Positions 2,222-64,000 of a stretch of 64,000 nt of DNA are shown here, piece after piece. Position numbers and translations under genes: made by a program. The stretch lies in sequence record NC_070958.1; one strand, 5' to 3'. A model generated the notes under the pieces. The model was not told the origin of the DNA and made no database searches. It saw nothing but the letters and a program-made list of their open reading frames with translations. Position 1 is the stretch's first letter. Each line of letters begins with the position of its first letter.

Positions 2222-2230
2222 CAAATAAAG

Positions 2231-39020: not shown

Positions 39021-39029
39021 ATTTACTTA

Positions 39030-48387: not shown

Positions 48388-49620
48388 TTATTTCACCTTG
48401 AAATTGATGCCGTGGATCTTAAAGAAGAACCCTTTCACCAGAGTGCAGGGATTCCCTTGGTTGACATACATGGAGTTAACCTTATGACCGCCAAGTGTAC
48501 CCGTCGTCTGGATCGGGTAAATCCTGTTGATCCTGAGGTCCACGTTTAAGATACGCTGCTTTATCCCGTAAGAACGCATATACGGAACAGGGAACAGCCC
48601 GTTGTCGAGCACAATAGGATGCTGGAAGCGTTCCTCGGTGTGCATCGCACTGGGGTAGAGGAAAGTGGTCAAAGGGACCAAATCCACTGCCAGTGTTGGG
48701 TTATCAATCAGCACGAGGAAGGAGTTGTGCATAGTCAGTGCTTCTTCCTTATACTGATCAAGTTTCGTCATATCCTTAAGTTCCGGAGTGACGGTGTAAT
48801 TACTGAATACCTGGTGATGACGCATCGCATCAAAACCATGAAGTCTTACTGAAAGATGATCAGAACTCACTCGGTCCAACATGTCCTGGTCAACAAGCAG
48901 TTGGCCATTCACAACAATCCAAACGGTCCTGTTGTCAAGCTTGTTTGCTCCGACCTTGATCTTCCAACGTCGCTCACCATTACTAGGCACGGTGGTCAAC
49001 ATATCCTTGGTGATCGGCAGTGTGGTGACTTTACCGAGCTTCTCAAATGACATAGCGCCGATACGAAGATCCTGTTTCTTCTTGATGTAGTCATTTCCGG
49101 CACCAAGGAGATAGATCCCATCTTGACGTCCGATAGACCTGTAGAAAACACCGTTACATGTGAACAAAGCGTGATCAGATTGCTTGTTGTAATTGATCCC
49201 TGACTTGTACATGTAGTGCTTTACCAGAAGGTCAGGAGCCCCGTCTGACAAGAGGTCAGACTGTCTATCCTTTGTAAGGTTTATATCACCTGGGAAGTGG
49301 AAATAGCCGTGAGTGAACAATCGTTCCAGTTTCACGTACTCGGCTTTATCTTCCGGGATGACATTGCTGGTTTTCAAAATGGTTGTTTTCTGAAGATCCA
49401 ACCACTCTTGGATGACAAGATCAGAGTTAGCGATGAAGCTAGCGTGATGGTCTTCCAAAGTGATACAAATCTTCTCTTTGTACATTTCATCATTGACGAC
49501 TATGTAGAGCATGGAGAACAGTTTATCCAGGTCACCTAGTCGGTAATTAGAAATGTCTGCAAAGTGGTAACCAGGAATGTATCCCTTATACCGCCCAACC
49601 GCATATAAGTATTTGTACAT
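48388..49620 (-). CDS. Probable virion structural protein (tail/baseplate)
   Basis: 410 aa, AGGA SD, divergent from the tail-fibre cluster; function inferred. Confidence 0.5.
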   Translation of the reverse strand: MYKYLYAVGRYKGYIPGYHFADISNYRLGDLDKLFSMLYIVVNDEMYKEKICITLEDHHASFIANSDLVIQEWLDLQKTTILKTSNVIPEDKAEYVKLERLFTHGYFHFPGDINLTKDRQSDLLSDGAPDLLVKHYMYKSGINYNKQSDHALFTCNGVFYRSIGRQDGIYLLGAGNDYIKKKQDLRIGAMSFEKLGKVTTLPITKDMLTTVPSNGERRWKIKVGANKLDNRTVWIVVNGQLLVDQDMLDRVSSDHLSVRLHGFDAMRHHQVFSNYTVTPELKDMTKLDQYKEEALTMHNSFLVLIDNPTLAVDLVPLTTFLYPSAMHTEERFQHPIVLDNGLFPVPYMRSYGIKQRILNVDLRINRIYPIQTTGTLGGHKVNSMYVNQGNPCTLVKGFFFKIHGINFKVK

Positions 49621-49650
49621 ATTCTTTCCTAATTGTTTACGAGGTTCTGC

Positions 49651-50406
49651 ATGGCAAACAATTCAATTAAGGGGCTTCCGGTCTACCCCTGGAACCCTTT
49701 CAACGACATGACGATTAACGAGATCAAAGGTGAAATCGTTAACGTGCAACCGACTCCTGGTGGGTCTATCATCATTCCACGCTGCGCTCCCTTCTTTGCG
49801 AGAGGGCTCAAAGTCATACACCGCGCATCGGGACGGGAATTGGAATTGAAGAAGGGTGAATTCTCACTTCTTTATCCGTTCGGCTCTTTCATTTCCAGGT
49901 ACAGCCAACTGGTGTATAGTGGGATACTGATCAACGGTGTCACAGAACCCACTAACTTTGAGCTTGAGTACAGCACCATAGGCGGTGATTTCGTACTGGA
50001 TGACGTTGCTTACGCTCAGGCCGTGGCCAACACACTCACCAGCCCACGACGCGCTGATTGGAGCGAACTTGTTAACCTTCCGCCCGCCTGGCCGGCAGAT
50101 CCCCACGATCATCCCGCATCGGATACCTTTAACTACTCCGATATGATCATCGCCCTCCAAAGTTACATCGACGCCATGACTGGCGGCGGTAACCCGGAGT
50201 CTATCAAGTCCTTACTGGACGATCACTTGAAGGCTGACCTCCAGGACGCTCACAAAGCCACACTGGGTGATCTCGGGATTAAGAATCTCCAAGACTGGGC
50301 CATGGCAAAACAAGAAGATATTGGTGGTAATTCAGAAGAGTTGCTCGTTAATATCAACGTGCTGAAGGCTGCGATCAGGCAACATGCCGCAGGGCAATGG
50401 CAATAA
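49651..50406 (+). CDS. Tail-fibre-related structural protein; start moved to ATG 49651
   Basis: IIPRCAPFF and WSELVNLPPAWPADPHDH align by eye with IPNAAPFY and WDNIDNKPLWFVPELHQH of the next gene, so it shares their N-terminal module. Confidence 0.6.
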   Translation: MANNSIKGLPVYPWNPFNDMTINEIKGEIVNVQPTPGGSIIIPRCAPFFARGLKVIHRASGRELELKKGEFSLLYPFGSFISRYSQLVYSGILINGVTEPTNFELEYSTIGGDFVLDDVAYAQAVANTLTSPRRADWSELVNLPPAWPADPHDHPASDTFNYSDMIIALQSYIDAMTGGGNPESIKSLLDDHLKADLQDAHKATLGDLGIKNLQDWAMAKQEDIGGNSEELLVNINVLKAAIRQHAAGQWQ

Positions 50407-50417
50407 CCCTAATACAT

Positions 50418-50450
50418 AAGGAGGGGGTCTGATGACTCCCTCCTTTTATT
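50418..50450 (+). terminator. Intrinsic terminator
   Basis: AAGGAGGGGGTC-TGAT-GACTCCCTCCTT then TTATT. Confidence 0.75.
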
Positions 50451-50465
50451 CCGCAGGAAATTAAC

Positions 50466-53400
50466 ATGAATAGAATTGACGTTCCTTTATATTCCTTGGA
50501 TCTCACAGGAGAATCTCCTTTCAATAGGGTAACCAGGGAAGAAGGTGTTCGTTCAAGTAACCAGTTGGTTATACCTAACGCAGCACCTTTCTACATTGAT
50601 TCCGTGACCATAACCCATGTGGACGGAACACCAATGGACCTCGGAAAGGACTATGACTTCTATGGGATCCTGGCAAATCTCACAGAGTACACGGCAAAGT
50701 CGGTCGGGCTTTACATTCGTTTCCTGAATGACGATATCAAGGAATGGATAGTTAGTTATAACACCGTAGGTAACTTCAACAAGATTACCACGGAAATTCT
50801 GAACATGCTCAAAGCGATCACGGAGGACGATCGACCGGTACACTGGGATAACATAGACAACAAACCACTCTGGTTCGTTCCCGAGCTCCACCAACATGAT
50901 TACACGTTCCATTTCTTCGGGTTTAGTGACCTGGCGAGAGAACTGCTCCGTGTTCAGCAATACAGCGCCCTTTTCAATGACGGTGTCCAGACCGATCTGG
51001 ACATGTTCAACATGCGCCTGGAGAGCTACATATCCGAATACCAGGGGGTGTTGAATCGGCTTATAACACGCCACGACACCAGTAAGGCCGACCCTCACGG
51101 CGTCTGGAAGACGGACATCGGTCTTGACAACGTGGACAACTTTAAGACCGCAACCCTCCAAGAAACCCTGGAAGGACTTCGTGACGATCTCCACATCACT
51201 GTCAACAACGCAGCACAGGCAATAGAAATTACTAAAGTTAGTAACGAGAGACTTTTCCCTGCCGGGACACTCCCTTTACTCCGTTATGGTAACGATAGTT
51301 TCATCCCCCCGAAAATAGACGGTTCCTTCGAGGGAATGGGTGGTTACAACTTTAGACTCGGTGTCGTACGTGAGAGTAGTGGGGAGATGGTCGCACTCCA
51401 ACATCGCAATGATGGTGTGGTCCGCGGACTCTACTTCCTGAAGTGTGATGACCCTTATGCCAAAAATCCCAACTGGTCGTATACCAGTTATCGGTACATT
51501 CACCCGACGGCTGTTGCCGACGGTGCCAACATTGACTCTGTGATCAATGGTAGTGGCCAGTATGTGTTGGTGATTGGGGACTCGGTTAAAGGAATTTGGT
51601 ACTGGTGTGAAACCAACGGGACCCTGGATCCCTCTAAACACGTGCTCAAACGCATCTCTGGTGATTTCATCAATGTCAATCACGGGATGGGTCAATCACT
51701 CACCCTACTGGTTGATAGTGATTACGCTGACCAGTGGTTTATCATGGGCTCCATGACTAATTCCGAAGTTAAGGCAGCTAGACCTGACTATCCCACATCA
51801 GTTGAAACAGGTGGTGGTGACCGTAGTGTAGAAGCAATGAGATTCTTCTCTTGTATTGCGTCATCTACAGCCGTGAATCTCTGCACTGTGGATTTCAAGG
51901 AGCAAGATGGTAAGACCCCTAAGGACAAAATCTGGATGCCTTATACCAGAACGGTGGTTTCTCCGAACACGATTACTGGTTATGAAGCGGAGTACGAAAC
52001 TCCGGCAATAACGGTGTGGAATTACCGTGGCATTCAGGGCATGTGTAAAAGAACAGCGGTTCAGAGAGAATACGCATTCCGTTTGTACAACTATATCTAT
52101 CGGATAGAGAAAACTACTGGTCTGGCTTCTGGTTCACGGCCTGTCTGGAAGGGAACATTGAAACTCGACCCGGTTACCAACACCGTAAAAGTACTTCCCG
52201 GTCCCGGTGAAAAACGATATCGGATCTCCATTAAACCGAATGACGATACCGGTGTTGAAAATGATCTCTTTGTAAACTGGAAGACAAGTTCTCTAGCCAC
52301 GCTCACCGATGATGTTTCAAGAGGATATGCCGAATTCGACCATAACGGTAATGCGATATACGTATCTCCCGTTGTATCCGGATCGTTACCTGGGCAAGTG
52401 ACCCTTTATAAAACAGACGCCCCACTCACTCCGGAAAGATTAATTGGTGCCAGGTCCGACTTTGACTATGTTGAAGTCAGCAAAACACCCATGCCGGAGG
52501 TTAACCCTGCTGGGTTGGCTGTTGGACTCACGGAACCAATGTCAATTCTCGGAGACACAAATCGCCCTGAAACGGCTATCGTTCTCGGTACTCAACTCTC
52601 TATGGAAAATGGAGAGATAAAAATAGAATGGGTTGGTCGCCCCACCCCGTTCATGAACCCTGACTGGACTGGTAACACTTCGTTACTCCAACCCATTACA
52701 ATCGGTGGTGTTCAGGTTAAGGGGTACCCTCTGACACCGGAGACGTATACGTGTTCCATGGGACCGTACAAGTTCTGGTCTCTACACGGGTTCTCCGTGA
52801 TACCAGAAGTTAGTAGTTCTGTAAGAGAACGCTGGACGAGGAGCTGTGGTGCCGATGGGATGGCGAACATCAATGGAACACCAACCTCCCAAACCGATTT
52901 CTTGTTCCCGAAGATTTGCAGGCACGAGATTGTTGGTAGGGAAGTCAGGATTATTCCCGTTGAAGTTTACAATGTCGAGAGTATGTTGTCCGGCCAGATC
53001 AAGACTTATTTGGATGGAAAGGGGATAAATACAGAAACCATCAAAATGACTTGGACGATGAGTCCCATTTACAACCGGAAGGGAGAAGAGCGTGTACTTC
53101 TCATGGTTTCCAGTCGCAAGCCAGGTGACGGACTTCGCGATGTAGAAGCTATCGTTATGGTGGGTCAATTGAAAGGTGTTGGTAATCCGATTACCAAAGA
53201 TGGTTATAAATACTACGAACACTCTACATTTGACTTCGGTGACAAGCACCACGTCGGACCTGCTTTGGCCGCACCGTCCACAGGACTCGCTCCTGGCGGT
53301 CCAATCCATGCGTGGCGAGCAGGGTTCTGTGTGGCTGATATTAACACCGGAACTACACCCGGGTCCGCCGATCAAACTTGTATTTATCTCCGGACGATAC

Positions 53401-54092
53401 ATAGGTACACTATTGTCGGGGACACGGTTCCCATAAACCTGCTTATTGAAATGGGGAACGATTTCTCAATAACCAGGTCAGCGGTAAAACCAACAGGTTC
53501 GTCACCTTACTCGGCCAGTATTTGCGCTTCTCCTGGGAATACCATGGGATACATATCGTCTAACGACGTCAACTTGGCTCGTGGGGCGTGTGTGGTGGCG
53601 GGTGGACTCCGTTGGGGGACCAGTCGGTTTGATATCTTGGCCTCGGCCGATCCAGGTGCTGGCGTGGAGAAACGGTTGTTGATTAGTAACTTACTCGTTT
53701 CAGCCTTCACCGTTTATTTCCAGGCGGCTGATAACGTTCTGCTGGGTGGTAGAGCGTATGATGTAAAAGCAACCTATATCGATATTCGGGATTTTGATAG
53801 CAACCCAGCTAACAAAACCTTCTATATTTATCTTAGGTTTGCTGGCGGTCAACCGACCTACCAGATCGAACGAGCACCTACTCCGGAAACAGCGACAAGC
53901 GCTTGCGTTGCCGTTGTAAAGACTGGTGCTACCAGAATAGAGACGGTAGTTCCCTATAATCGATTCTTGATGAACGGAGTGGAGATCAGTAGTAAACGGC
54001 GAGGAGCGGCAATACTTTCCCCGGCCGGCAGTATCTTCGATAAGGGTTCTTTAGCGCCCATCATCAGTGAATCTGATTTCTTGCCAGGGTAA
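50466..54092 (+). CDS. Tail fibre/baseplate paralog 1
   Basis: 1208 aa; DPHGV..DIGLDNVDNFKTAT and FIPPKIDGSFEG shared with paralog 2; beta-rich body. Confidence 0.7.
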   Translation: MNRIDVPLYSLDLTGESPFNRVTREEGVRSSNQLVIPNAAPFYIDSVTITHVDGTPMDLGKDYDFYGILANLTEYTAKSVGLYIRFLNDDIKEWIVSYNTVGNFNKITTEILNMLKAITEDDRPVHWDNIDNKPLWFVPELHQHDYTFHFFGFSDLARELLRVQQYSALFNDGVQTDLDMFNMRLESYISEYQGVLNRLITRHDTSKADPHGVWKTDIGLDNVDNFKTATLQETLEGLRDDLHITVNNAAQAIEITKVSNERLFPAGTLPLLRYGNDSFIPPKIDGSFEGMGGYNFRLGVVRESSGEMVALQHRNDGVVRGLYFLKCDDPYAKNPNWSYTSYRYIHPTAVADGANIDSVINGSGQYVLVIGDSVKGIWYWCETNGTLDPSKHVLKRISGDFINVNHGMGQSLTLLVDSDYADQWFIMGSMTNSEVKAARPDYPTSVETGGGDRSVEAMRFFSCIASSTAVNLCTVDFKEQDGKTPKDKIWMPYTRTVVSPNTITGYEAEYETPAITVWNYRGIQGMCKRTAVQREYAFRLYNYIYRIEKTTGLASGSRPVWKGTLKLDPVTNTVKVLPGPGEKRYRISIKPNDDTGVENDLFVNWKTSSLATLTDDVSRGYAEFDHNGNAIYVSPVVSGSLPGQVTLYKTDAPLTPERLIGARSDFDYVEVSKTPMPEVNPAGLAVGLTEPMSILGDTNRPETAIVLGTQLSMENGEIKIEWVGRPTPFMNPDWTGNTSLLQPITIGGVQVKGYPLTPETYTCSMGPYKFWSLHGFSVIPEVSSSVRERWTRSCGADGMANINGTPTSQTDFLFPKICRHEIVGREVRIIPVEVYNVESMLSGQIKTYLDGKGINTETIKMTWTMSPIYNRKGEERVLLMVSSRKPGDGLRDVEAIVMVGQLKGVGNPITKDGYKYYEHSTFDFGDKHHVGPALAAPSTGLAPGGPIHAWRAGFCVADINTGTTPGSADQTCIYLRTIHRYTIVGDTVPINLLIEMGNDFSITRSAVKPTGSSPYSASICASPGNTMGYISSNDVNLARGACVVAGGLRWGTSRFDILASADPGAGVEKRLLISNLLVSAFTVYFQAADNVLLGGRAYDVKATYIDIRDFDSNPANKTFYIYLRFAGGQPTYQIERAPTPETATSACVAVVKTGATRIETVVPYNRFLMNGVEISSKRRGAAILSPAGSIFDKGSLAPIISESDFLPG

Positions 54093-54105
54093 TAAATAAC
54101 AAGAC

Positions 54106-54140
54106 GAGAGTGCGATCTTTTGATCGCACTCTCTCTTTAC
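54106..54140 (+). terminator. Intrinsic terminator
   Basis: GAGAGTGCGATC-TTTT-GATCGCACTCTC then TCTTT. Confidence 0.75.
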
Positions 54141-54164
54141 TTCTATTTGTTCTAAGAGGAAAAC

Positions 54165-57100
54165 ATGAAAGATATCGAGATTGTCAAAATTGACTACTCG
54201 GCGGCGGATCCGGCATACAAGGTAAAAGAGAAACATGTCATAAAAGACATTTCCGTGCCATGGCTGGTACCCGACCAAGGGCCGTATTACACAACGGGGT
54301 TGCGTTTGTACAATGCAGGAACACCCCTCACTTATGAAAAGGACTACATCTACGACACCCCGGCTAGTGAACTCACTGACCGGTTGGGTCGGGATGTTTA
54401 TCACTTTATCATCCTCCGTGATCACATTGTGTCCAGTGCAACAGCAATTGACATTGAGTATCAAAAGGTTGGAAACCCCATGTTGGGGAGGAATCAACTG
54501 TTACAGATGCTGGACGACCTGATCATCTCCGGTAAACCTATTGACATAACAACCAGTGTCATAGGGATGCCGGAAACATTCCCTAGCGCCAAGCACTCCA
54601 TGGATGTTACCAAGCCAGAGGAAGTTGTGGGGTTTGGTAACTTGATGATGTTGTTTAGTATTCTGTCAGGGCGTGTCGCCGGCAATGGCGATTACGTTAA
54701 GGAATTACTGGACAAGCTCAAAACTGACAACTTCAAGAGACTGGACTATATCCAGAACCTGCAATGGAATGCAATTATCAACCACACCAGTCGGGTAAGA
54801 AACCCCCACGGGGTTAAAGCCGATAATGTCGAGTTGGGTAAACTGGAAAACTACAAAACAGCCACCCCGGCACAGGAGATAGAAGGGACGCGCTCTGATC
54901 TCTACTCTACTCCACATGGACTGGGAGAGATAATCCGTGAAACAGAACCAGATTCAGAAGAATTCGTTTTCCAGAACGAACTTCCCTTCAGTTATTATGG
55001 TTCTGGTCTTTATCTTCCTCCCCCAATATCTGGGTCTTTCGAAGGTCTGGGAGCCGATATAGAAAACGGCACCTTTGTACAAGAAGGTAACGGGTGGGTG
55101 GTAGGTCTTTCGCGAATGTTCGATGGTCGGTTGCGGAACCTCTATTACATTTATGATCAGGGATTGGACGATATCCCTAACGTGGGAAATTTCAGGAACA
55201 GTTATGTACAATACAGGCATCCTACCATAGACGCAGCGGGTTGTTCAGCAACCATGACGATGTCTGGGTCCGGTGCCGATGTACTGGTGGTGGGTGACCA
55301 GGAGAAAAACCGGTACTGGATAACAGATCCTAATTCCACTTTGGATCCTACGGCTCACGTGTTCAAGGAAATGGACCTTAGTGTCTATTCTAACCGTAAA
55401 GATTGGCAGTACTGGGTGAACGCATCCTCTAACATTTTCAAAGTTGGTGGGTACTTCTACCTGATGGTCTATAACGACGAAAATATAGAAGGTATCGACA
55501 GCACCGGATACGTGTTAGCAAACGCGGCGGGTTGGTTGTGTCGTTGTCCCGTGGCGGATCTAACCAACCCGAACAAACCGACGATGGTTTTCCAGGCTGT
55601 TAATCTTACCTACGACAACTTGCGTAGGGAAAGACGTGTCAACCAATCCGCATTTAGCATTGATCGTTGGGAGCGCAACGCTAACGGATTTACGTCAGGT
55701 CTCGGATGCCGATTTGGATCCAATACCGTGGAACTGATGTCACACCGTCGACGAGCAATGATTTTCTGTCCCAACCCCAACAATGAAAACGTCATCGCGG
55801 TGAAAATACTCTTCATTGTTAGGACGGTAAGAAGGACGCAGTTTGGTAACGTGGCAAGACAAGTTACAATGGCAGTGGATTACACCTTTGACGCGACAAC
55901 CAACACCCTGGCACTCAGTCCCAAATGGAAATACGTGACCTTAGACGAAGCAAATGAGATCCCCACCAACCTTGATCAAGAATCTCTTAACCGTCAATGG
56001 TTGACGGCAGGAATGGTGGCCGGTAACAGCGGTCGAAAGGGGATTTTCACATTTGGTGGGACACGTATAAATGTTTCGTTCATACCAGGATACGGTTATA
56101 TCGGGCAATATAGTAGCGCAGATGGCGGTCTGCCACACGCTATCTGTAAGACCTTGGTAAATCCGTCCAGGGATCCGTCAAGGGATTGGGAGTATTTCCA
56201 ACAACCCACAACTTACATCATGCCTAATGGAGAAAGTAACGACGGTACCAATGGTATCAGTTATGAGACACCATTCGGTTTCATGGCGTATCCGGTCTGG
56301 AACGTTGATGTTTTCAACATCAACGGTGTGAATAGCCCCACACCTGTAGAACTGTTCATGGGGTTCAGCCACGATAAAGCCGAAACATTTTTCTATCGTG
56401 AATGCGAACCAGGTGACGGAACCAAGTACCTCCAACGACCGGAGTTGAAACTTTTGTCCGGTGTCACCCCCTATTCCAGGCAAATGAATAGCCGGTACGG
56501 AATTGTCAAAGGTATGCACTCTTACATGGGAAGGGTGAACAATCCCAGATCCAGGGATAAGTACAGTGCGGAGTACGGGTGCTTCTCAGTCCATTGGAAT
56601 GGAGTCCCGGCAAAGCCGCCCAGGTTCACCATCGTTCCAGGTCGTAACGCCAACCCCAGTGCGCCTGTTTATGGTCCCGACAGAGGTATCTACATCCCTC
56701 TGATATGCGAACATGAATTAGCTAATGGGGTCATGACGGTTCGCTCTACTCCAGCTGGATCGGTTTATCTTCCCGCTTATATATGGAGTGAATGGAAAGA
56801 TCGCATCACAAATGGTGAACTATGGCCGTCAATAGACATGTCTGTCGACTTTTACCTCTGTGCTAAAAAGGATGGCGCGCCCCTTGGTCGCAGACACTCG
56901 TACGCGGTGTTTACGTACCATACGACGGATAACCCCTTGGATATTAAACAGGTGATCTCTAAGTTCACTTGGGATACTAACGGCCAAATGCCGGATGGAA
57001 CACCCATTATGAGGGTTAGTTCCGAACAGTATCCGTTCACTTCTGGCATCACAGGAAACCCTCTTAAACCAAAGAGAGACCTGGCACCAGGAGAGACCAA

Positions 57101-57896
57101 TATCCACCTCCCCGCCGCCAGTAATGACGTGACACACCAACCTAATGGCCAGTGGAGTTACATTGATCCTAGTGCACTTTCTAGGATGTCATTGCAGGTC
57201 TTGGAATATCCCGAGTTGGGACCTGACCAATTCACTATCTGGGGTTATTCGGGCTGGAGGTTATCCACTGTTTCTTATTCACGGATCTTCACGTTTAACG
57301 ACAGCAACGTTCCGTCACACACAGCTAACAACATCAAAGCTTACTCTCCATGGACTGGTGCTTATGTTGGGTATGGCGCGTTCCAAATCGCTCATCCCGA
57401 TTACGACATGTGTGCTGGTCTGAACTTTAATGATGTTGGTGGTGGTGCCATGAACTTGGTTGTTGCCAATGGCGGGCGTCAAATACTCATGGGAAGTGTG
57501 TTCTCAGTGGGTAACTGGAGTGTCTTCGTAAACAGTGATGTGACGGTGACCTTTAACGGTTACTCCATGACCGCTGTTAAACGTAACTTCGACCTTCGTG
57601 ATTTCAGTGAGAAGTACAGGGATAATGTGTTCTACATATACTGTGTCGCTAGAGGGTCTAAAGCCGAGTATGAGCTCACCCACATACTGAGACACTCCAG
57701 AGGTGATTGCTTGTTGATATGTAAGATCACAACTGGTTCCCAAGGGATCTCGTTGATTGAACGTTATCAGCCTTTTGCCATCAATGGCTCCCCCATGACA
57801 CCTGTGCGTGATGCAGGGATCCCATACACGACCGGCAACATGTTCGAAGATGGTGAATGGAATCACATCAAGAAATCAGAGTTGTATATCGACTAA
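54165..57896 (+). CDS. Tail fibre/baseplate paralog 2
   Basis: 1243 aa; NPHGV..VELGKLENYKTAT and YLPPPISGSFEG; C-terminal module parallel to paralog 1. Confidence 0.7.
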   Translation: MKDIEIVKIDYSAADPAYKVKEKHVIKDISVPWLVPDQGPYYTTGLRLYNAGTPLTYEKDYIYDTPASELTDRLGRDVYHFIILRDHIVSSATAIDIEYQKVGNPMLGRNQLLQMLDDLIISGKPIDITTSVIGMPETFPSAKHSMDVTKPEEVVGFGNLMMLFSILSGRVAGNGDYVKELLDKLKTDNFKRLDYIQNLQWNAIINHTSRVRNPHGVKADNVELGKLENYKTATPAQEIEGTRSDLYSTPHGLGEIIRETEPDSEEFVFQNELPFSYYGSGLYLPPPISGSFEGLGADIENGTFVQEGNGWVVGLSRMFDGRLRNLYYIYDQGLDDIPNVGNFRNSYVQYRHPTIDAAGCSATMTMSGSGADVLVVGDQEKNRYWITDPNSTLDPTAHVFKEMDLSVYSNRKDWQYWVNASSNIFKVGGYFYLMVYNDENIEGIDSTGYVLANAAGWLCRCPVADLTNPNKPTMVFQAVNLTYDNLRRERRVNQSAFSIDRWERNANGFTSGLGCRFGSNTVELMSHRRRAMIFCPNPNNENVIAVKILFIVRTVRRTQFGNVARQVTMAVDYTFDATTNTLALSPKWKYVTLDEANEIPTNLDQESLNRQWLTAGMVAGNSGRKGIFTFGGTRINVSFIPGYGYIGQYSSADGGLPHAICKTLVNPSRDPSRDWEYFQQPTTYIMPNGESNDGTNGISYETPFGFMAYPVWNVDVFNINGVNSPTPVELFMGFSHDKAETFFYRECEPGDGTKYLQRPELKLLSGVTPYSRQMNSRYGIVKGMHSYMGRVNNPRSRDKYSAEYGCFSVHWNGVPAKPPRFTIVPGRNANPSAPVYGPDRGIYIPLICEHELANGVMTVRSTPAGSVYLPAYIWSEWKDRITNGELWPSIDMSVDFYLCAKKDGAPLGRRHSYAVFTYHTTDNPLDIKQVISKFTWDTNGQMPDGTPIMRVSSEQYPFTSGITGNPLKPKRDLAPGETNIHLPAASNDVTHQPNGQWSYIDPSALSRMSLQVLEYPELGPDQFTIWGYSGWRLSTVSYSRIFTFNDSNVPSHTANNIKAYSPWTGAYVGYGAFQIAHPDYDMCAGLNFNDVGGGAMNLVVANGGRQILMGSVFSVGNWSVFVNSDVTVTFNGYSMTAVKRNFDLRDFSEKYRDNVFYIYCVARGSKAEYELTHILRHSRGDCLLICKITTGSQGISLIERYQPFAINGSPMTPVRDAGIPYTTGNMFEDGEWNHIKKSELYID

Positions 57897-57901: not shown

Positions 57902-57928
57902 GGGGAGGGAGACCTCCCCCATTTATTT
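57902..57928 (+). terminator. Short GNRA-loop hairpin terminator
   Basis: GGGGAGG-GAGA-CCTCCCC then CATTTATTT. Confidence 0.6.
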
Positions 57929-57944: not shown

Positions 57945-60900
57945 ATGTATGTAGATAAGGATAAACCCCAACCCCCACTGGACGAGCGTACCGATCCGGT
58001 AGGGGTCGTACTTGAAGCGTTCATTGAGAACGATCGTAAGGTACAAGAGGTTACGGGTGATATCGTTGACACGATAAAAGACATCCAGAATGCACAGACG
58101 TCAGCCACTCAGAAACTTGACAAGTTTGATGCCGACGTTAAGGCAAAACTTAAAACCCACGTTGATAAACGCGGTGCGATTCACGGAGAGAGTAAACACA
58201 CAGTAGGATTGGGGAACAAGGATAACTACCCAATGGCTACAATGCAGGAACATGTGGACGGTAAGGCTCTAGCTTATGCACACCCCTCCGGTCTCCGCGA
58301 GTTGGTGGAATCCAGAGTGAAAAGTGATCCTACCAAGTATATTCCTGCGCGAGTAATACCTCTGGCTTCCGGTGGGATGTTGGGTGAAATTCCTCAGTAC
58401 CACATGGATTTGAGTATTGGTGAACTCGACCAATCCAAACAGGACCCCAATCTTCATTTAGGGGAAACCCCTTGGGAATTTAGCACCACCTCAGGCGCTC
58501 TGATATTCCCCACAATCAACAACGCACCTCACCATGGGCGATACACCCAAGTTCCCCAAGGAATGAACGTGTTCAGTCATGGACCCCATGGTGGGACAAA
58601 AATCCGAGTCTACAATAAGACCCTGGATAGCCGAAGAACACGCCCGTCGTTTATTCGTGGTTGGGGTGATGCTTCAGGTGCTCCCGAGCAATTAGGGACC
58701 TGTGTCAAAGCGGGGAGTTCGCTCTTCGACAAGACGCACGTTATTTATCGCGAAGTCAACTGGTTGCTTCGGTCCTTTAACAAAAATGCGCTCCCCTCCG
58801 ATGTGGTAGAGATATACAAGCACTATTCGAAAGAACCAGAAGGTATCTTCGAGTACGCAGAGGGATTTCTCTTTAACTATTGGGTAACACCCCTCAACGC
58901 TATCGTCCCCGGCGGATCAGTTGCCGAACCACATATCAAGCTGGATATGCGGTGCTTTAAAATGGACGTGGCTGATTACCGTGCCGCCCAAGGAGCGGTC
59001 AGTCTGAATGGGGAACAGCGGTCATCCCTGGGGGATACCACTCAAACGTTCTCTGCGACGGTACCTGCGCACAACAAAATGGTTTTTGGAGGTCAAGCTG
59101 GTTCCGGGGTAGGTTCTATTTATATCAGGCTGAATCGTCTTTTGACACTCCCTGGCGGGATGGAGAATGCGTTTCTTGCCAATCTGAACCAAGACCTCGT
59201 GCGACAGTTAACCTTCGCGTGGCGCAATCGCATGAGTTACCACGGTCTGTTCAGGATCCCTGTAGGTTGGTGGAACAAACAAAAAACTAAATACTGGCAC
59301 GCCTGGGTCGATTTCGAGATTATCGATCGTCCTTTCTATACTGGGCTCAATAACCAGCTTCGTGTGTTAACAGCAGATCCGTCTTGGAACGCAGTCCAGA
59401 CTGTCGACGCCAACTGGAACGTGACCGGGTCAGGAATGTTCAAAGAGTACCGCGCCGACATCAAAGATAACCCGATGCACCCCTTGGCGCTCGGTGGCAT
59501 CTTCGAATCCCAAGGCGGGCACATGAAGACCTATACCTTGTATGGAAGACAGTACACTGCCTACCATCAACACGACATGGGTCAATCGCTGGATTTCATC
59601 ACTAAGGGTAACGTCCCTCTTCCTCCCCCGACCCAGAGCGAGTACAGTGCCAGGTCCACCTTGAACGGTACCGGTCTTTATGGGGACCACCTCCGACACA
59701 TTCCTGTCGATATCGACCAACAGACCGGTTTGGTGACGTACCTTACTCACGTTCGCGATTATCGTGATCGTTATCGGTGGGCCCGTGTGGTCATCGATGG
59801 AGAACAGGAAGTCGTCCAGGACAGGTTCTACGGGAACTACCTTGGTCCCAAAGTCCAGAAATTGGACTGGCTCCCAGGGATCAAAACACCCAGACCGTTC
59901 GTTATTTCCAACGATGACTTCCAACCCACGATGAACATCAACGGGTTGGTCTTTACAGCCGAAAACAAGTTTCTTGGCTTTGGTAGTTTCAGAACCAATG
60001 AAGCTAACCAGGATTACCTTGAATACGTTGACGAGATTCGACTGGACGAGCAAGTTATTGCTTGGGTGAAGAGTAATGCCGGTGGGTTTACCAACCCTGA
60101 TTTACTCTTCTTCTATTTCAGGGGGAGTTTGTTCTGGTTCTGTCGTTGTTCCGATCCGGCTGAATATCCGGCTGATGGAAAAGATTGTTACTACGGCGTA
60201 ATAAAGGACTGTGGTGTCAAACTCGATGGTGGTGGTGCCCGTGTCATGGGTCCGAATGGTTCTATCGCTGATTCAATCACGATTAACAAATTCAACTTAA
60301 TGACCAAAAATAGTTTACTGGTCGATCAAGCGGAAGTTTACGGGATAGATTCCCTCTCCGGTCGTGATGTTTACATCATGATGACTCAACATCATAACGA
60401 TTCAGGAACCCAAGATCATGACGTAATGGTCAACATGGGTCCTTTCAACAATTTCTATATTGAAATGAAGTTGATACGTTCTGGTGATGGCGCCATGACG
60501 TTTAGACCGAAGCCAGAGGCGATCGATCCGGTATTCCCTTACACAGAGAGTAATGGTTTCCAAATAGACTATGACGCACACACTCTGTACGGGACAAAAA
60601 TTCCGGAAAGATTCCACGTAAACTACCAGTCCCCCGTGATGTTGAAGAAAGGGATGTGGAGCTACCGTAAAACCCCCAATAACTTTGGGTTCTTTACACG
60701 TCGACATGGGTTCATTACGATAACCGGTTGTGTGATGGCCAGTTACTATGGGACAGACGTTTATCCCATGGGATCAGTCCTCACGGTTTCCGGGAAGAAC
60801 ACAGTGGTTAAGAAGCCGGTCCAGTATAGTCCCGACGACATCGATGGAAATTCGGAACTGTCCGTCAGAATAGTGGGTGATGAGCCTGTACTCTACGGTA

Positions 60901-63900
60901 CGAATTTTAATCCCAATGGTTACGAGGTAGAACCACATAACGGCGCTGCCCCAGCTGGTTGGGGGTCTGGTTCGAACTTCTATTATTACGACCCGGCTAG
61001 TTGGAGAAATACTTTCATGCCGGTGATAGATGGACGGCGGATGAGTTGGTATGGTTACGGTTCGACTGTACCCGTTCTTCTGGGGAAACCTGGGGAAGGA
61101 CTTCCTATCAACAGGTATTACTTTGGAACCCAAAGTACCCAGATGACCTGGGACACCGCTAAAGGAAGGGTGGTGAAGTTTGATACCGAAATAGCCACCA
61201 CTGTGGCTGTAAACGGAAACGCAGAAGTGACCGGAAGTGCTACGCAGTATGTTATCCCTGCACAGTACACCGGGGTGGTGACAATCGACCTTTATAACGC
61301 CAATAAACTCATCTGGGCACCAGGACTGACAAACCTGATCCGGTTGGGGAGCGAAATAATGGAGGTTGACTTCTCTGGTTCAGACCAGTTTACGATTTCG
61401 GCCCCGTTACCAAAACGTGTCACCAGTCTGAAACGTGCGTTCTATAAAGCTAAGGGTGCGAGTTATCCTGGGCTTCAAAATTGGAACGTGACGGGCGTCA
61501 CCGACTTCACCGAGTGTTTTGCTGAAACCACCGCATTCAACCAAGATCTTAGTAGATGGACCTTCGTTATGGGGAGGACGTTGCGAGGGATGTTCCAGAA
61601 CGCTGTGGCATTCAACCAACCTGTTCCCGGAACTTGGTTCCAATACATCCTGGATTGTTCCTACATGTTTGCTGGTTCCGGTGCGTTTAACAAACCTCTA
61701 ACTGGAACCGCGTTACAGTGTAAAACAGCCATCGGTATGTTCCAAGGCTCCAAAGCGTTCAACTCCAGTATTGATGGACTCAAGTTCCTGGAAATTGTGG
61801 ATATCTCTGATTTCTTCAGGGAGTCGGTCGTTTTCAACCAATCCATAAACGGATTTGACGTTTCGAAGGTTGAGCGCGCGGAAAGGATGTTCCAAGGTGC
61901 GAAAGGGTTCCTCCAACCCATCACACTCAACATGAAACAATGTCATTCAGTGTCAGGGATGTTCAAAGATAACCTTGTGTTTAATGCACTTGTGAATATC
62001 TCGCTCCCTATCTGTACTGACTTCAGCCAAATGTTCATGGGGACCAAGCTGTTCAACCAGAAATTGCCTGCATGGTCATTTAGCCCCAGGACGACATTGC
62101 GAGAAATGTTCAGCGGGTCCAAAGCCTACAACCAGTCAATGGACCATTGGATGATGGAACGTGTCGCGTCCATTTCCAGAATGTTCCAGTTCGCCGCTGC
62201 TTACCAGCAACCTATCAAGACCTGGACCTTCTATAAGTTGGTTGACTGTTCTTACCTGTTCGCTAATTCCTCGTTCAATGCGGATGTCAATGATATAAAG
62301 TGGCCAAGTGATCCAACCCTGGGGATTAACGCCACTGGTATCTTCTATTACAATTTGGTTTATAACCAACCACTGAGTAAATGGAATACCGTTGCATTCA
62401 AATTGTTCAATGGTATCTTTAATCTGGCAAGATCGTTTAACCAAGACATTTCAGCCTGGAATGTCTCCAATGGTGAAAACTTTGAAAACCTCTTTAAAGA
62501 CGCAATTGAGTTCGATGGGGACATTTCCAACTGGGATGTGGGTAAATCCAAAACGTTCTCTTACTTCGCAGCGAATGCCGTCAAGTTCAAATCCGACCTT
62601 TCCAAGTGGAACGTGAGCTCTTGTTTCAACTTCGAAGCGATGTTCAAACACTGTTTGGTTTTCGATAGCGATATCTCTGAATGGGATGTCTCCAACGGTA
62701 CCACTTTCGAGTGGATGTTCGATGGATATTCGTTAACCGAAACTGTCACACCTGAATACTTTATGATCTTCAACCAAGATCTGAGTAAATGGAACGTTGG
62801 AAAGGGTGTTCGCTTTAATGCCATGTTCCGTAAGTGTCAATTGTTCACGTCTGACCTTTCTGGGTGGGATATGACAAACGCGCAAGAAGCCGGTGCGATG
62901 TTCCAACATTGCTACGAGTTCCAGTCGGAACTTGCTTCTTGGAAAGTGGCAAAATTCACTCATGTTCGTTACATGTTCTTCCACGCCCACAACTTCAACG
63001 CTCCTATCCCTGATTGGGACGTGTCAAGGTGTACTGACTTTGAACAGATGTTTAGTTACACCTACATGTTCAACCAGGATTTGAGCAACTGGGATATGAG
63101 CAATGCCAGAAACCTCAATAGGATGTTCGATGTTGCGGCGGTCTTCAATGGCGATGTTTCTACTTGGGATGTTTCCAATGTAGTGACATTCTGGGGAATG
63201 TTCAGGGATGCGGCGGAGTTCAATGGCGATATCTCTGGTTGGGTTACATCCAGTGCGAATGATTTCAGTGGTATGTTCCAAGACGCGGTCTCGTTTGATC
63301 GGGATTTGAGTGGATGGGATGTCTCCAAGGGGATCAAGTTCAATGCGATGTTTAGGTCGACCAAGTGTAATTTCGGTATGAACAACTGGAACGTGGGTAA
63401 CGCCACTACCTTTGCCGAAATGTTCAAGGGGAACATTGTCTTTAACCAGAAACTGTCTACTTGGAAAACAGGTAAAGTTACTGATATGGGACAGATGTTC
63501 TCTGGGTGTAAAGCACTGACTGATCCGGGAATCGGTAATTGGGATACTGGACGCGTGGAACTCATGAATCAGATGTTCTTCGACTGTCCTCTTTTCAATT
63601 CCAATATCTCTGGTTGGAACGTATCCAATGTGACAAACTTCTCCAGGATGTTTATGAGTGCGCTTAAGTTCAACGCTAACTTGTCGACCTGGAATGTTTC
63701 CAACGGTGTAATATTCGAGAAAATGTTCCACACGGCGGAACTCTTTAACCAACCTCTGAATACTTGGAGAATGGTGAAAGGTGAAGATTTCACAGATATG
63801 TTCTATGGTGCGAAAGCGTTCAACCAACCCATCAATGACTGGGGTATGGCCAGCGCCAAGACACTCAACGGGATGTTCCGTGGTTCCTCTGTGTTCAACC

Positions 63901-64000
63901 AACCTCTGGATAAATGGAACACGGGCAATGTTGTCAATATGGACTCGACCTTCCGTGATGCCAAACAGTTCAACCAGAATCTGAGTATCTGGAATGTCGC
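57945..64000 (+). CDS. Tail fibre paralog 3, at least 2018 aa and truncated by the window end, with a C-terminal DUF285/PARCEL-type repeat array
   Basis: ATG 57945 after GAGAG. Hand translation of 57945-~58400 and 61080-64000 shows the same frame with no stop, and the ORF track lists no closed ORF in that frame. AIHGESKHTVGLGNKDNYPMAT matches the paralog motif. Confidence 0.8.
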   Translation, partial: MYVDKDKPQPPLDERTDPVGVVLEAFIENDRKVQEVTGDIVDTIKDIQNAQTSATQKLDKFDADVKAKLKTHVDKRGAIHGESKHTVGLGNKDNYPMATMQEHVDGKALAYAHPSGLRELVESRVKSDPTKYIPARVIPLASGGMLGEIPQYHMDLSIGELDQSKQDPNLHLGETPWEFSTTSGALIFPTINNAPHHGRYTQVPQGMNVFSHGPHGGTKIRVYNKTLDSRRTRPSFIRGWGDASGAPEQLGTCVKAGSSLFDKTHVIYREVNWLLRSFNKNALPSDVVEIYKHYSKEPEGIFEYAEGFLFNYWVTPLNAIVPGGSVAEPHIKLDMRCFKMDVADYRAAQGAVSLNGEQRSSLGDTTQTFSATVPAHNKMVFGGQAGSGVGSIYIRLNRLLTLPGGMENAFLANLNQDLVRQLTFAWRNRMSYHGLFRIPVGWWNKQKTKYWHAWVDFEIIDRPFYTGLNNQLRVLTADPSWNAVQTVDANWNVTGSGMFKEYRADIKDNPMHPLALGGIFESQGGHMKTYTLYGRQYTAYHQHDMGQSLDFITKGNVPLPPPTQSEYSARSTLNGTGLYGDHLRHIPVDIDQQTGLVTYLTHVRDYRDRYRWARVVIDGEQEVVQDRFYGNYLGPKVQKLDWLPGIKTPRPFVISNDDFQPTMNINGLVFTAENKFLGFGSFRTNEANQDYLEYVDEIRLDEQVIAWVKSNAGGFTNPDLLFFYFRGSLFWFCRCSDPAEYPADGKDCYYGVIKDCGVKLDGGGARVMGPNGSIADSITINKFNLMTKNSLLVDQAEVYGIDSLSGRDVYIMMTQHHNDSGTQDHDVMVNMGPFNNFYIEMKLIRSGDGAMTFRPKPEAIDPVFPYTESNGFQIDYDAHTLYGTKIPERFHVNYQSPVMLKKGMWSYRKTPNNFGFFTRRHGFITITGCVMASYYGTDVYPMGSVLTVSGKNTVVKKPVQYSPDDIDGNSELSVRIVGDEPVLYGTNFNPNGYEVEPHNGAAPAGWGSGSNFYYYDPASWRNTFMPVIDGRRMSWYGYGSTVPVLLGKPGEGLPINRYYFGTQSTQMTWDTAKGRVVKFDTEIATTVAVNGNAEVTGSATQYVIPAQYTGVVTIDLYNANKLIWAPGLTNLIRLGSEIMEVDFSGSDQFTISAPLPKRVTSLKRAFYKAKGASYPGLQNWNVTGVTDFTECFAETTAFNQDLSRWTFVMGRTLRGMFQNAVAFNQPVPGTWFQYILDCSYMFAGSGAFNKPLTGTALQCKTAIGMFQGSKAFNSSIDGLKFLEIVDISDFFRESVVFNQSINGFDVSKVERAERMFQGAKGFLQPITLNMKQCHSVSGMFKDNLVFNALVNISLPICTDFSQMFMGTKLFNQKLPAWSFSPRTTLREMFSGSKAYNQSMDHWMMERVASISRMFQFAAAYQQPIKTWTFYKLVDCSYLFANSSFNADVNDIKWPSDPTLGINATGIFYYNLVYNQPLSKWNTVAFKLFNGIFNLARSFNQDISAWNVSNGENFENLFKDAIEFDGDISNWDVGKSKTFSYFAANAVKFKSDLSKWNVSSCFNFEAMFKHCLVFDSDISEWDVSNGTTFEWMFDGYSLTETVTPEYFMIFNQDLSKWNVGKGVRFNAMFRKCQLFTSDLSGWDMTNAQEAGAMFQHCYEFQSELASWKVAKFTHVRYMFFHAHNFNAPIPDWDVSRCTDFEQMFSYTYMFNQDLSNWDMSNARNLNRMFDVAAVFNGDVSTWDVSNVVTFWGMFRDAAEFNGDISGWVTSSANDFSGMFQDAVSFDRDLSGWDVSKGIKFNAMFRSTKCNFGMNNWNVGNATTFAEMFKGNIVFNQKLSTWKTGKVTDMGQMFSGCKALTDPGIGNWDTGRVELMNQMFFDCPLFNSNISGWNVSNVTNFSRMFMSALKFNANLSTWNVSNGVIFEKMFHTAELFNQPLNTWRMVKGEDFTDMFYGAKAFNQPINDWGMASAKTLNGMFRGSSVFNQPLDKWNTGNVVNMDSTFRDAKQFNQNLSIWNV
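61482..64000 (+). repeat. At least 33 tandem ~25-aa repeats, consensus W[DN]VSxxxxFxxMFxxAxxFNQDLSx (DUF285 / bacterial surface protein 26-residue repeat type)
   Basis: Counted by hand translation, e.g. WNVSNVTNFSRMFMSALKFNANLST and WDVSRCTDFEQMFSYTYMFNQDLSN. Confidence 0.85.

What the first reader, a model, noticed from the sequence alone, without database searches (positions are those of the whole stretch)
57945..64000. Giant tail-fibre paralog carrying a highly variable DUF285/PARCEL repeat solenoid, invisible in the ORF track
Seen: a single frame of at least 2018 aa. It starts with the same virion-attachment motif as the two upstream paralogs. After what looks like the family C-terminal module (...PVLLGKPGEGLPINRYY, ~61080) and a short linker, it continues into at least 33 repeats of ~25 aa. 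Framework residues (W, M-F, F-N, L) are fixed while the other positions differ in almost every repeat; repeats 12 and 17 carry inserted loops (about 4 and 11 aa). Known: this repeat type occurs mainly in cell-surface proteins of bacteria such as Mollicutes and Listeria and is LRR-like. Inference: the virion displays a long antibody-like binding surface for a receptor, capsule, mucus or a eukaryotic host surface, built by grafting a cellular adhesin repeat onto a tail scaffold. This is the best candidate for a little-described system in the window.
Basis: partly seen in the sequence, partly recalled or inferred. Interest (0 to 1): 0.78.

Follow-up and report, generated by a model that had tools for sequence, protein, structure and literature searches.

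The report
Jumbo-phage tail fibre with DUF285 solenoid
The region is one intact 2,042-residue gene of Aeromonas jumbo phage D6 that joins a phiKZ-type tail-fibre body to 33 LRR-like DUF285 repeats; related phages share this design, and nobody has studied it yet.

Summary
Window 57945-64000 is a single open frame. It is gene D6_0119 of Aeromonas phage D6, a phiKZ/OBP-like jumbo phage. The protein has 2,042 aa and the gene ends 73 nt beyond the window. Residues 1181-2016 are 33 DUF285/PARCEL units (Pfam E = 5.5e-190) with a fixed framework and variable positions between. AlphaFold2 gives a confident solenoid (pLDDT 92), and its only structural neighbours are LRR ectodomains.

- The gene sits in a fibre cluster syntenic with phiKZ gp130-gp135.
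- Its body has the same fold family as the two upstream genes.
- It shares with them only a ~110-aa helix-plus-motif segment and lacks their gp131-like docking domain.
- The fusion is not unique. 40 of 48 homologues carry it, with about 2 to 60 repeats, and GenBank already labels some as "BspA family" proteins.
- No accessible paper characterises the protein.

New here: the array of phage LAh10 is a recombinant. It matches D6 up to about aa 1380 and matches phage D3 after that. The fibre genes form a divergence island inside flanks that are 94-97% identical. This is the usual signature of a host-recognition module.

Presence in the virion and the binding target are untested. "Antibody-like" and "eukaryotic surface" remain speculation.

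The parts
57945..64000 (+). CDS D6_0119, window part (aa 1-2018 of 2,042). The gene ends 73 nt beyond the window.
   Evidence: No stop in this frame; GenBank CDS 119945-126073; phrog_17273 over aa 1-1348.
57902..57919 (+). GC-rich hairpin between D6_0118 and D6_0119 (terminator-like), followed by an RBS-like GAGAGAG and the ATG at 57945.
58032..58367 (+). aa 30-141: long helix plus the conserved fibre motif (HG..VGLGN.DN..AT). This is the only segment with sequence homology to D6_0117/0118 and to phiKZ gp131/gp132.
   Evidence: hhalign E = 2.4e-10; BLASTP against gp131 E = 1e-4 and gp132 E = 3e-3; the same motif occurs in about 75 other representative proteins, often 4-10 times each.
58362..61121 (+). 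aa ~140-1059: all-beta body, predicted to be beta-propeller-like. It is a complete protein on its own in PS1/AVP1-type phages.
   Evidence: AF2 pLDDT 83. Foldseek PDB top hits are propellers (DPP9, LRP2/6, Nup133, Sema, TolB) at E = 1e-4 to 1e-2. Foldseek BFVD matches proteins the size of the upstream paralogues, plus proteins named 'virion structural protein' and 'minor tail protein', at E = 1e-21 to 1e-9. Orthologues end at this boundary.
61122..61484 (+). aa 1060-1180: linker with a small beta-sandwich (about aa 1065-1143) and the N-terminal cap of the solenoid.
   Evidence: AF2 strands at model residues 26-103, pLDDT 80-95.
61485..63992 (+). aa 1181-2016: 33 DUF285/PARCEL units of about 25 aa, predicted to form an LRR-like solenoid.
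   Evidence: AF2 pLDDT 92.1; Foldseek top hits TLR9, TLR3, SHOC2, LGR5 and BRI1.
62727..62765 (+). aa 1595-1607: loop inserted in repeat unit 17.
   Evidence: The repeat HMM splits the unit here; AF2 confidence dips locally to pLDDT 65-79.
62085..62145 (+). aa ~1380-1400: crossover zone. LAh10 matches D6 upstream of it and matches phage D3 downstream.
   Evidence: 20-aa window identities; BLASTP and blastn; megablast ends at query nt 4243.
63993..64000 (+). Start of the C-terminal cap (aa 2017-2042, continues beyond the window). A cap of about 26 aa closes the protein in all DUF285-bearing homologues.
   Evidence: A tail of 26-33 aa follows the last repeat in all such members. It is the most variable part between D6 and D9 (8 of 26 residues differ).
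48388..49620 (-). D6_0115, homologue of phiKZ gp130, the baseplate protein beneath which fibres dock.
   Evidence: BLASTP E = 7e-15; PMC13250141.
49651..57896 (+). D6_0116, D6_0117 and D6_0118: fibre paralogues with a gp131-like N-terminal domain.
   Evidence: BLASTP against phiKZ gp131/133/134/135 E = 1e-10 to 1e-4; phrog_2163; 0117 against 0118 E = 4e-38.

Best explanation
D6_0119 is most likely a virion-borne component of the baseplate fibre apparatus of a phiKZ/OBP-type jumbo phage, and its far end is a host-surface binding module.

Shown:
- The protein is built from an N-terminal helix plus fibre motif, a large beta-propeller-like body, a beta-sandwich, 33 DUF285 turns and a ~26-aa cap.
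- The locus is syntenic with the phiKZ fibre cluster.
- The repeat array varies from about 2 to 60 units among relatives and is exchanged between phages by recombination.

Inferred:
- The protein lacks the gp131-like docking domain. It probably joins the fibre complex through its helix and motif, in the way the small phiKZ protein gp132 carries only that segment, and co-assembles with D6_0116-0118 beneath the gp130 homologue.
- The solenoid would project about 15 nm, from 33 turns at the roughly 0.5 nm rise typical of LRR proteins.
- The variable residues between the fixed F/M/N/L/W framework, together with the cap, would contact a surface structure of Aeromonas.
- Swapping cassettes would then change specificity.
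For: - The order 0115(-), 0116, 0117, 0118, 0119(+), 0120(-) matches phiKZ gp130(-) followed by gp131-135(+). 0115 resembles gp130 (E = 7e-15), the N-termini of 0116-0118 resemble gp131/133/134/135, and 0120 resembles gp164, the phiKZ central spike (E = 1.5e-28).
- The phiKZ cryo-EM atlas shows these paralogues forming hetero-hexameric fibres docked under gp130, with a propeller domain at the far end (PMC13250141).
- The body of 0119 is structurally like proteins the size of the upstream paralogues, and like proteins named 'virion structural protein' and 'minor tail protein' in Erwinia Joad and Vibrio pTD1 (Foldseek E = 1e-21 to 1e-9).
- hhalign links aa 30-141 to the paralogues (E = 2.4e-10).
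- Synteny is strictly kept in six other jumbo-phage contigs. Flanking genes are 50-60% identical and the fibre bodies only 32-35%.
- Within the genus Ludhianavirus the fibre genes are at most 69-77% identical or cannot be aligned, while the flanks are 94-97% identical.
- LAh10 matches D6 up to about aa 1380, then is 97.5% identical to D3 over aa 1401-1800.
- D6 and D9 differ by 1.3% in the body, 3.7% in the repeats and 31% in the cap. 24 of 27 differences in canonical units fall at variable positions.
- The solenoid model has pLDDT 92 and its neighbours are LRR receptors.
- There is no signal peptide or hydrophobic segment, so it is not a cellular-type lipoprotein.
Against: - There is no direct evidence that the protein is in virions. 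The OBP record calls OBP_141-144 'putative virion structural protein' but the orthologue OBP_145 only 'hypothetical protein', and I could not read the OBP proteomics paper.
- 0119 lacks the gp131-like docking domain.
- The electron micrographs of phage N1M2, which has an orthologue, showed no visible fibres (PMC7058600).
- The likeness to LRR structures is weak (E about 1e-4, TM 0.1-0.17).
- Orthologues with no repeats or only 2-4 repeats exist, so the array is dispensable for the body's function.
- Higher synonymous divergence in the distal repeats points to recombination rather than proven positive selection.
Confidence: 0.55

Rival explanations
1. It is a virion fibre protein, but the DUF285 array is not the primary receptor binder. 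Recognition would be done by the beta-propeller body or the C-terminal cap. The solenoid would act as a shaft or spacer of adjustable length, or as a low-affinity sticker for extracellular matrix, capsule or biofilm material.
For: - The body alone is a complete protein in PS1/AVP1-type phages, and CF8/ZPAH34 carry only about 2-4 repeats.
- The phiKZ gp131 propeller is the proposed binding domain (PMC13250141).
- The cap is kept as a ~26-aa tail in every member, yet it is the most divergent piece between D6 and D9.
- Repeat number varies 30-fold, as would be expected of a length-setting element.
Against: - Substitutions between D6 and D9 concentrate at the variable, presumably exposed, repeat positions (24 of 27).
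- Whole cassettes with different sequence, not just different length, are exchanged between phages.
- LRR-type solenoids are typically ligand binders (established knowledge).
Confidence: 0.25
2. It is not a virion component. It would be made during infection and act at or in the host cell, for example by altering the cell surface, excluding other phages or binding a host protein, and it would sit in the fibre cluster only through shared ancestry with the paralogues.
For: OBP_145 is annotated 'hypothetical' while its neighbours are 'virion structural'. The gene lacks the docking domain of its paralogues. A hairpin separates it from 0118.
Against: - There is no signal peptide, lipobox or membrane segment (maximum hydropathy 1.09).
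- Its position between fibre genes and the central-spike homologue is strictly conserved.
- The body shares a fold family with proteins named virion structural.
- It retains the fibre helix and motif.
- The mosaic pattern is typical of adsorption genes.
Confidence: 0.12
3. The solenoid binds a eukaryotic surface or mucus (as in the phage-adherence-to-mucus idea) and so positions the phage where Aeromonas lives on fish or gut surfaces.
For: Cellular DUF285/PARCEL proteins include surface proteins of host-associated bacteria such as Mycoplasma, Listeria and Helicobacter (PMC2996958). An algal giant virus packages two DUF285 proteins in its particle (PMC7507832).
Against: The same fusion is conserved in phages of compost Pseudomonas fluorescens, leaf-surface Erwinia, Kosakonia, Shewanella, Serratia and Klebsiella, which share no common animal host. 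No data bear on this directly.
Confidence: 0.05

Closest known systems
phiKZ tail-fibre paralogues gp131-gp135, docked beneath gp130 (cryo-EM atlas PMC13250141; gp131 C-terminal domain is a seven-bladed propeller)
   Same: Same gene order next to a gp130 homologue. Same helix plus HG..VGLGN motif segment. A beta-propeller-like body. A family of paralogues with divergent far ends.
   Different: D6_0119 lacks the gp131-like N-terminal domain. Its body is about 900 aa rather than about 500. It continues into a beta-sandwich and a DUF285 solenoid that no phiKZ paralogue has. No sequence or fold hit to a solved gp131 structure came back.
Orthologues in OBP-like jumbo phages (OBP_145, LAh10_51, D3_0120, N1M2, pEt-SU, Yubaba, Kc263, AH04; phrog_17273 and phrog_22899)
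   Same: Same architecture, synteny and C-terminal cap. [quoted passage not shown]
   Different: Repeat number runs from about 2 to 60, against 33 in D6, and repeat sequences differ. None is functionally or structurally characterised in the literature I could search.
Cellular DUF285/PARCEL surface proteins (Pfam PF03382, TIGR02167; Mycoplasma LppQ-type lipoproteins, Listeria 26-residue repeat proteins; PMC2996958)
   Same: The same 25-residue unit with a fixed hydrophobic framework and variable hydrophilic positions. Scores are far above the family cutoffs.
   Different: There is no lipoprotein signal, T9SS or PKD module. The array is fused to a phage fibre body. The Mbov_0838 lipoprotein model scores below its cutoff (386 against 500). 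Identity to cellular members is only 25-40%.
Classical LRR binders (TLR ectodomains, internalins, lamprey VLRs)
   Same: A predicted one-strand-per-turn solenoid with a conserved core and variable surface. Foldseek top hits are TLR9, TLR3, SHOC2, LGR5 and BRI1.
   Different: No Pfam LRR family matches. Fold scores are weak (TM 0.1-0.17). The consensus differs from LxxLxLxxN. The likeness is one of working principle, not family membership.
Giant PARCEL ORFs of other jumbo phages (Vibrio phage pir03 ORF200, about 19 kb; Lak megaphages; Synechococcus and Campylobacter phages)
   Same: DUF285 arrays encoded by large phages: 114 phage records match (PMC7765460).
   Different: Those arrays are not shown to be fused to the gp131-related fibre body. 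Their context and function are equally unknown.

Membership tests
DUF285 / PARCEL repeat proteins (PF03382, TIGR02167) | Scores above the curated cutoffs of the family models | tested here: met
   PF03382 scores 620.4 bits (cutoff 25), E = 5.5e-190, 11 stretches. TIGR02167 scores 55.9 bits (cutoff 30).
DUF285 / PARCEL repeat proteins (PF03382, TIGR02167) | Tandem units of about 25 residues with conserved hydrophobic framework and variable hydrophilic positions | tested here: met
   33 units; F18 24/24, F12 23/24, L/I22 22/24, W25 19/24; mean identity between units 30%.
DUF285 / PARCEL repeat proteins (PF03382, TIGR02167) | 'Palindromic' coding sequence (dyad symmetry, PMC2996958) | tested here: inconclusive
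   One antisense frame is unusually open (9 stops in 838 codons), but its translation gives no hit to the repeat HMM. I did not reproduce the paper's own symmetry measure.
Mbov_0838-type PARCEL surface lipoproteins (NF045896) | Whole-protein score above cutoff, and a lipoprotein signal | tested here: not met
   386 bits against a cutoff of 500. There is no hydrophobic N-terminus (first 40 aa mean hydropathy -0.7; protein-wide maximum 1.09).
phiKZ gp131-like fibre paralogues | gp131-like N-terminal (docking) domain | tested here: not met
   D6_0116-0118 match the N-termini of gp131/133/134/135 (E = 1e-10 to 1e-4). D6_0119 matches only gp131 aa 185-279 and gp132. The hhalign overlap starts at aa 166 of the paralogues.
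phiKZ gp131-like fibre paralogues | Helix plus conserved motif segment that follows the N-terminal domain (the six-helix-bundle region in phiKZ) | tested here: met
   hhalign probability 96.8%, E = 2.4e-10. BLASTP against gp131 E = 1e-4. AF2 places helices at aa 18-74, at low confidence.
phiKZ gp131-like fibre paralogues | Position in the fibre cluster next to the gp130 homologue | tested here: met
   conserved in six further jumbo-phage loci.
phiKZ gp131-like fibre paralogues | Beta-propeller distal domain | tested here: inconclusive
   The best PDB fold hits are propellers, but with weak scores (E = 1e-4 to 1e-2, TM about 0.1). No solved gp131 structure appeared among the top 50.
phiKZ gp131-like fibre paralogues | Physical presence in the virion fibre | not testable with these tools
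   No proteomic or cryo-EM data for this protein or its orthologues were found.
BspA / classical leucine-rich repeat proteins | Match to a Pfam LRR family | tested here: not met
   Only PF03382 is reported at E <= 0.01. The GenBank label 'BspA family' on the orthologues is broader than that test, because no LRR model matches.
Diversity-generating retroelement target | A near-identical template repeat close to the variable region | tested here: not met
   No long near-identical direct or inverted repeat involves the gene. Only diverged DUF285 units (61-71% nt identity) were found in the 64-kb window. TRF finds no array.

The most novel reading that the evidence does not exclude
DUF285/PARCEL arrays would be a modular receptor-binding scaffold of jumbo-phage fibres, working in the way LRR-type variable binders do. 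Specificity would be written in the variable positions of 25-residue turns, and phages would retarget adsorption by recombining blocks of turns within the array (as between D6, LAh10 and D3) and by expanding or contracting it from about 2 to about 60 turns. If so, this would also give the first functional and structural handle on a very large family of surface proteins (thousands of cellular members) for which these searches returned no solved structure.
Probability: 0.35. Interest if true: 0.7.

Novelty: new variant of a known kind. Interest (0 to 1): 0.5.

Why it matters
How phiKZ-like jumbo phages recognise their hosts is poorly understood, and only the phiKZ fibre base has been resolved. 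This gene family shows a second kind of far-end fibre module, a long LRR-like DUF285 solenoid. The module is conserved across a clade that infects Aeromonas, Pseudomonas, Erwinia, Klebsiella, Serratia and Edwardsiella. It is also the most mosaic part of otherwise near-identical genomes, so it is a concrete candidate for the host-specificity determinant in phages being considered against Aeromonas in aquaculture.

DUF285 is also abundant in cellular surface proteins: 2,656 hits at E <= 1e-10 in one length band alone. The sequence search of the PDB found no solved relative. A well-behaved, signal-less phage-borne array would therefore be a good subject for structural work.

Tried and rejected
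- PDB sequence searches with both halves of the protein, with both upstream paralogues and with the family profile returned nothing meaningful.
- The search for related loci with the single protein found no relative. The alignment query was needed.
- The OBP genome and proteome paper could not be fetched by DOI or by a PMC id recalled from memory. Whether OBP_145 was seen in virions therefore stays open.
- Papers on ZPAH34, AerS_266, BMBAH1, N1M2 and Joad/RisingSun say nothing about this protein.
- Text searches for DUF285 or BspA together with phage, tail or virion gave only the pir03 annotation table and the giant-virus AaV proteome.
- Recent tandem duplication is rejected. TRF finds no array, and nucleotide self-BLAST of the D6 and LAh10 repeat regions finds nothing.
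- A DGR-type mechanism is rejected for lack of a template-like repeat.
- An antisense 'palindromic' DUF285 coding is not seen.
- The GenBank note 'putative chitinase' on D6_0119 has no support in Pfam or NCBIfam.
- The downstream 'BspA' label on LAh10_53 is wrong. That protein is SbcC-like.

Full report
**What is there.** The reading frame that opens at 57897 has no stop up to the last base of the window. The other two forward frames carry 100 and 158 stops over the same 7 kb. The first ATG is at 57945, 5-11 nt after a GAGAGAG stretch and just after a GC-rich hairpin that follows the previous gene. The mechanical ORF list omits the frame only because it runs off the window. Megablast shows that the window is Aeromonas phage D6 (MN131137.2, genus Ludhianavirus, 259.8 kb), record positions 62001-126000. 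The frame is CDS D6_0119, 2,042 aa, which ends 73 nt beyond the window.

**The repeats.** Pfam DUF285 (PF03382) matches with E = 5.5e-190 in 11 stretches, and the NCBIfam PARCEL repeat model TIGR02167 is above its cutoff. An HMM built from the clean units finds 33 units between aa 1181 and 2016. Unit 12 is 4 residues longer than the rest. In 24 canonical units F18 is invariant and F12 is present in 23. L/I22 is present in 22, W25 in 19, M11 in 18 and N19 in 17. The remaining positions hold 7-14 different residues, and mean identity between units is 30%. At DNA level the units are old: Tandem Repeats Finder sees no array, self-BLAST finds nothing, and the best unit-to-unit nucleotide identities are 61-71%. 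There is no template-like repeat that would suggest a diversity-generating retroelement.

**Predicted structure.**
- C-terminal part: with an alignment of 38 homologues, AlphaFold2 models aa 1040-2018 at mean pLDDT 92.1. It shows a small beta-sandwich (about aa 1065-1143) followed by a continuous solenoid. The only local dip in confidence is at the unit-17 insert.
- Foldseek against the PDB returns only LRR ectodomains at the top (TLR9, TLR3, SHOC2, LGR5, BRI1). E-values are about 1e-4 to 1e-3 and global TM-scores are low. The fold is therefore LRR-like in principle, with no close solved relative. Sequence searches of the PDB find nothing.
- N-terminal part: aa 1-1180 are modelled at pLDDT 83. 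Low-confidence long helices (aa 18-74) are followed by an all-beta body. Its best PDB neighbours are beta-propeller proteins (DPP9, LRP2/LRP6, Nup133, semaphorins, TolB), again weakly.

**Relation to the neighbours and to phiKZ.**
- BLASTP links D6_0119 to D6_0117 and D6_0118 only through aa ~38-144 (E = 3e-3 and 3e-4). Profile-profile comparison confirms homology over aa 30-141 against aa 166-276 of the paralogues (E = 2.4e-10). D6_0117 and D6_0118 themselves are clear paralogues (E = 4e-38).
- The folds say more. The N-module model matches predicted viral structures of 1,150-1,250 aa at about 10% sequence identity over about 1,200 columns, with E = 1e-21 to 1e-9. These include a 1,243-aa protein (the size of D6_0118), a 1,246-aa protein (the size of OBP_143), two Erwinia phage Joad 'putative virion structural proteins' and a Vibrio pTD1 'minor tail protein'. 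'Paralogue' is therefore right for the body fold and for one short motif, but not for the extreme N-terminus.
- Comparison with phiKZ, fetched by the accession given in PMC6034870, shows four relations. D6_0115 resembles gp130 (E = 7e-15). The N-termini of D6_0116-0118 resemble the N-termini of gp131/133/134/135 (E = 1e-10 to 1e-4). D6_0120 resembles gp164 (E = 1.5e-28). D6_0119 matches only gp131 aa 185-279 and the 110-aa gp132.
- The 2026 cryo-EM atlas of phiKZ reports twelve fibres. [quoted passage not shown] The same paper calls gp164 the central spike (PMC13250141).
- D6_0119 therefore sits in the homologous fibre cluster and keeps the helix and motif segment, but it lacks the docking domain.

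**Distribution.**
- The word-indexed protein search finds 48 homologues of the N-module. 40 carry PF03382, and 8 (1,172-1,173 aa, the Aeromonas PS1/AVP1 group) do not.
- Repeat counts run from about 2 (CF8, ZPAH34) through 13-21 (most, including OBP_145) and 25-33, up to 40-60 (the D3 group). Every DUF285-bearing member ends in a tail of 26-33 aa after the last repeat.
- An exhaustive search of 1.84 billion representatives finds only 14 with the full module, four of them module-only. About 75 more share just the aa 60-140 motif, often repeated 4-10 times, which marks it as a generic phage-fibre motif.
- tblastn places the fusion in jumbo phages of Aeromonas, Pseudomonas (OBP), Erwinia, Kosakonia, Klebsiella, Serratia, Edwardsiella, Shewanella and Pantoea. 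DUF285 arrays of any context occur in 114 phage records, including Synechococcus phages, Lak megaphages, Campylobacter phages and Vibrio jumbo phages.
- IMG/VR adds six contigs of 260-285 kb, two of which have the lengths of the pEt-SU and OBP records. Gene order 0115 to 0121 is strictly conserved in all six. Flanking genes are 50-60% identical to D6 and the fibre bodies only 32-35%.
- Cellular DUF285 proteins are very numerous: 2,656 at E <= 1e-10 in one length band, often with T9SS or PKD modules. They are only 25-40% identical, so there is no recent cellular donor.

**Mosaicism.**
- D6 and D9 differ at 54 of 2,042 residues: 1.3% in the body, 3.7% in the repeats and 8 of 26 in the cap. Of 27 differences in canonical units, 24 lie at non-framework positions. 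Synonymous differences also rise in the distal repeats, which points to recombination.
- D6 and LAh10 are at least 96% identical up to about aa 1400. After that they are 30-60% identical, and LAh10 has about 11 more units (2,311 aa).
- The LAh10 segment aa 1401-1800 is 97.5% identical to phage D3, although the D3 body is only 54% identical to the D6 body (and the LAh10 body is 98% identical to D6's). In 20-residue windows LAh10 switches from 20/20 identity with D6 to 19-20/20 identity with D3 between aa ~1380 and ~1400.
- At nucleotide level D3 and D6/LAh10 are 94-97% identical downstream of the gene. Across 0117-0119 they are at most 69-77% identical or cannot be aligned, except for the exchanged block, which is 90% identical between LAh10 and D3.
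- The fibre cluster is therefore the divergence island of the genus, and the DUF285 array is recombined in blocks.

**Interpretation.** The best-supported reading (confidence about 0.55) is a virion fibre component whose far-end DUF285 solenoid and cap bind a host surface structure. Attachment to the fibre complex would be through the N-terminal helix and motif rather than a docking domain of its own. The architecture, the homologies, the synteny and the mosaic pattern are shown. Virion presence, mode of attachment, oligomeric state, ligand and a role in host range are inferred. The rival readings are:
- the array acts as a spacer or matrix sticker, with recognition elsewhere (0.25);
- the protein is not in the virion and acts during infection (0.12);
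- the array binds a eukaryotic surface (0.05).

Points against the main reading are these. OBP_145 is annotated 'hypothetical' among neighbours called 'virion structural'. The docking domain is missing. No fibres were visible in N1M2 micrographs. The fold scores against LRR structures are weak.

**Novelty.** Both building blocks are known: the gp131-type fibre cluster and the DUF285/PARCEL repeats. I found no paper that describes, localises or models it. I rate it a new variant of a known kind with moderate interest (0.5). The in-array recombination between co-circulating phages and the confident model of a fold with no close solved relative are what make it worth following.

**Limits.** No multimer prediction was possible. 

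Noticed in passing
L001:19145-21625 (D6_0121, just beyond the window) and L003:16989-19469 (LAh10_53): [quoted passage not shown] The protein is SbcC-like (phrog_77 E = 3.6e-60, weak SMC_N match) and has no DUF285 unit, so the label looks misplaced from the neighbouring gene.
   Followed up: yes
window 2216-2264 and 38987-39035; L001:18092-18123 (about 90 nt beyond the window end): The same GC-rich stem (core CCTCCC..GGGAGG) recurs as a hairpin at several intergenic sites. One is a 14-bp bidirectional terminator-like hairpin right after the stop of D6_0119. It looks like a genome-wide terminator motif of this phage.
   Followed up: partly
L004 (phage D9), orthologue of window 50466-54092 (D6_0117): In the D9 record, which is described as a partial genome, the orthologue of D6_0117 is annotated as two adjacent CDSs instead of one. 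That is one break. I did not examine its kind or whether it is real or a sequencing error.
   Followed up: no
No chitinase or glycosidase family is hit in Pfam or NCBIfam. The beta-propeller-like body could in principle be enzymatic, but nothing here supports that.
   Followed up: partly
window 61485-64000, minus strand (e.g. ORF 63024-63902, 292 aa): One antisense frame of the repeat region is unusually open (9 stops in 838 codons, longest open run 324 codons), which recalls the 'palindromic' property described for PARCEL genes. Its translation does not match the repeat HMM.
   Followed up: partly
window 48388-57896 plus L001:18138-19124: D6_0115 resembles phiKZ gp130, D6_0116-0118 resemble the gp131-135 N-terminal family, and D6_0120 resembles the phiKZ central spike gp164. 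None of these functions is annotated in the D6 record, where all are 'hypothetical protein'. D6_0116 (251 aa) consists of the N-terminal domain alone.
   Followed up: partly
L014 (phage D3) against L001 and L003: Between D3 and D6/LAh10 the three large fibre genes are at most 69-77% identical at nucleotide level or cannot be aligned, while the DNA immediately downstream is 94-97% identical. This is a sharp divergence island within one genus.
   Followed up: yes
phage records MT811961.1 (Vibrio phage pir03), OM319461.1, OV032902.1: Vibrio jumbo phages show 27-31 separate DUF285-matching places per genome. The pir03 paper lists a PARCEL ORF of about 19 kb. Much larger phage DUF285 genes therefore exist in a different context.
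   Followed up: no
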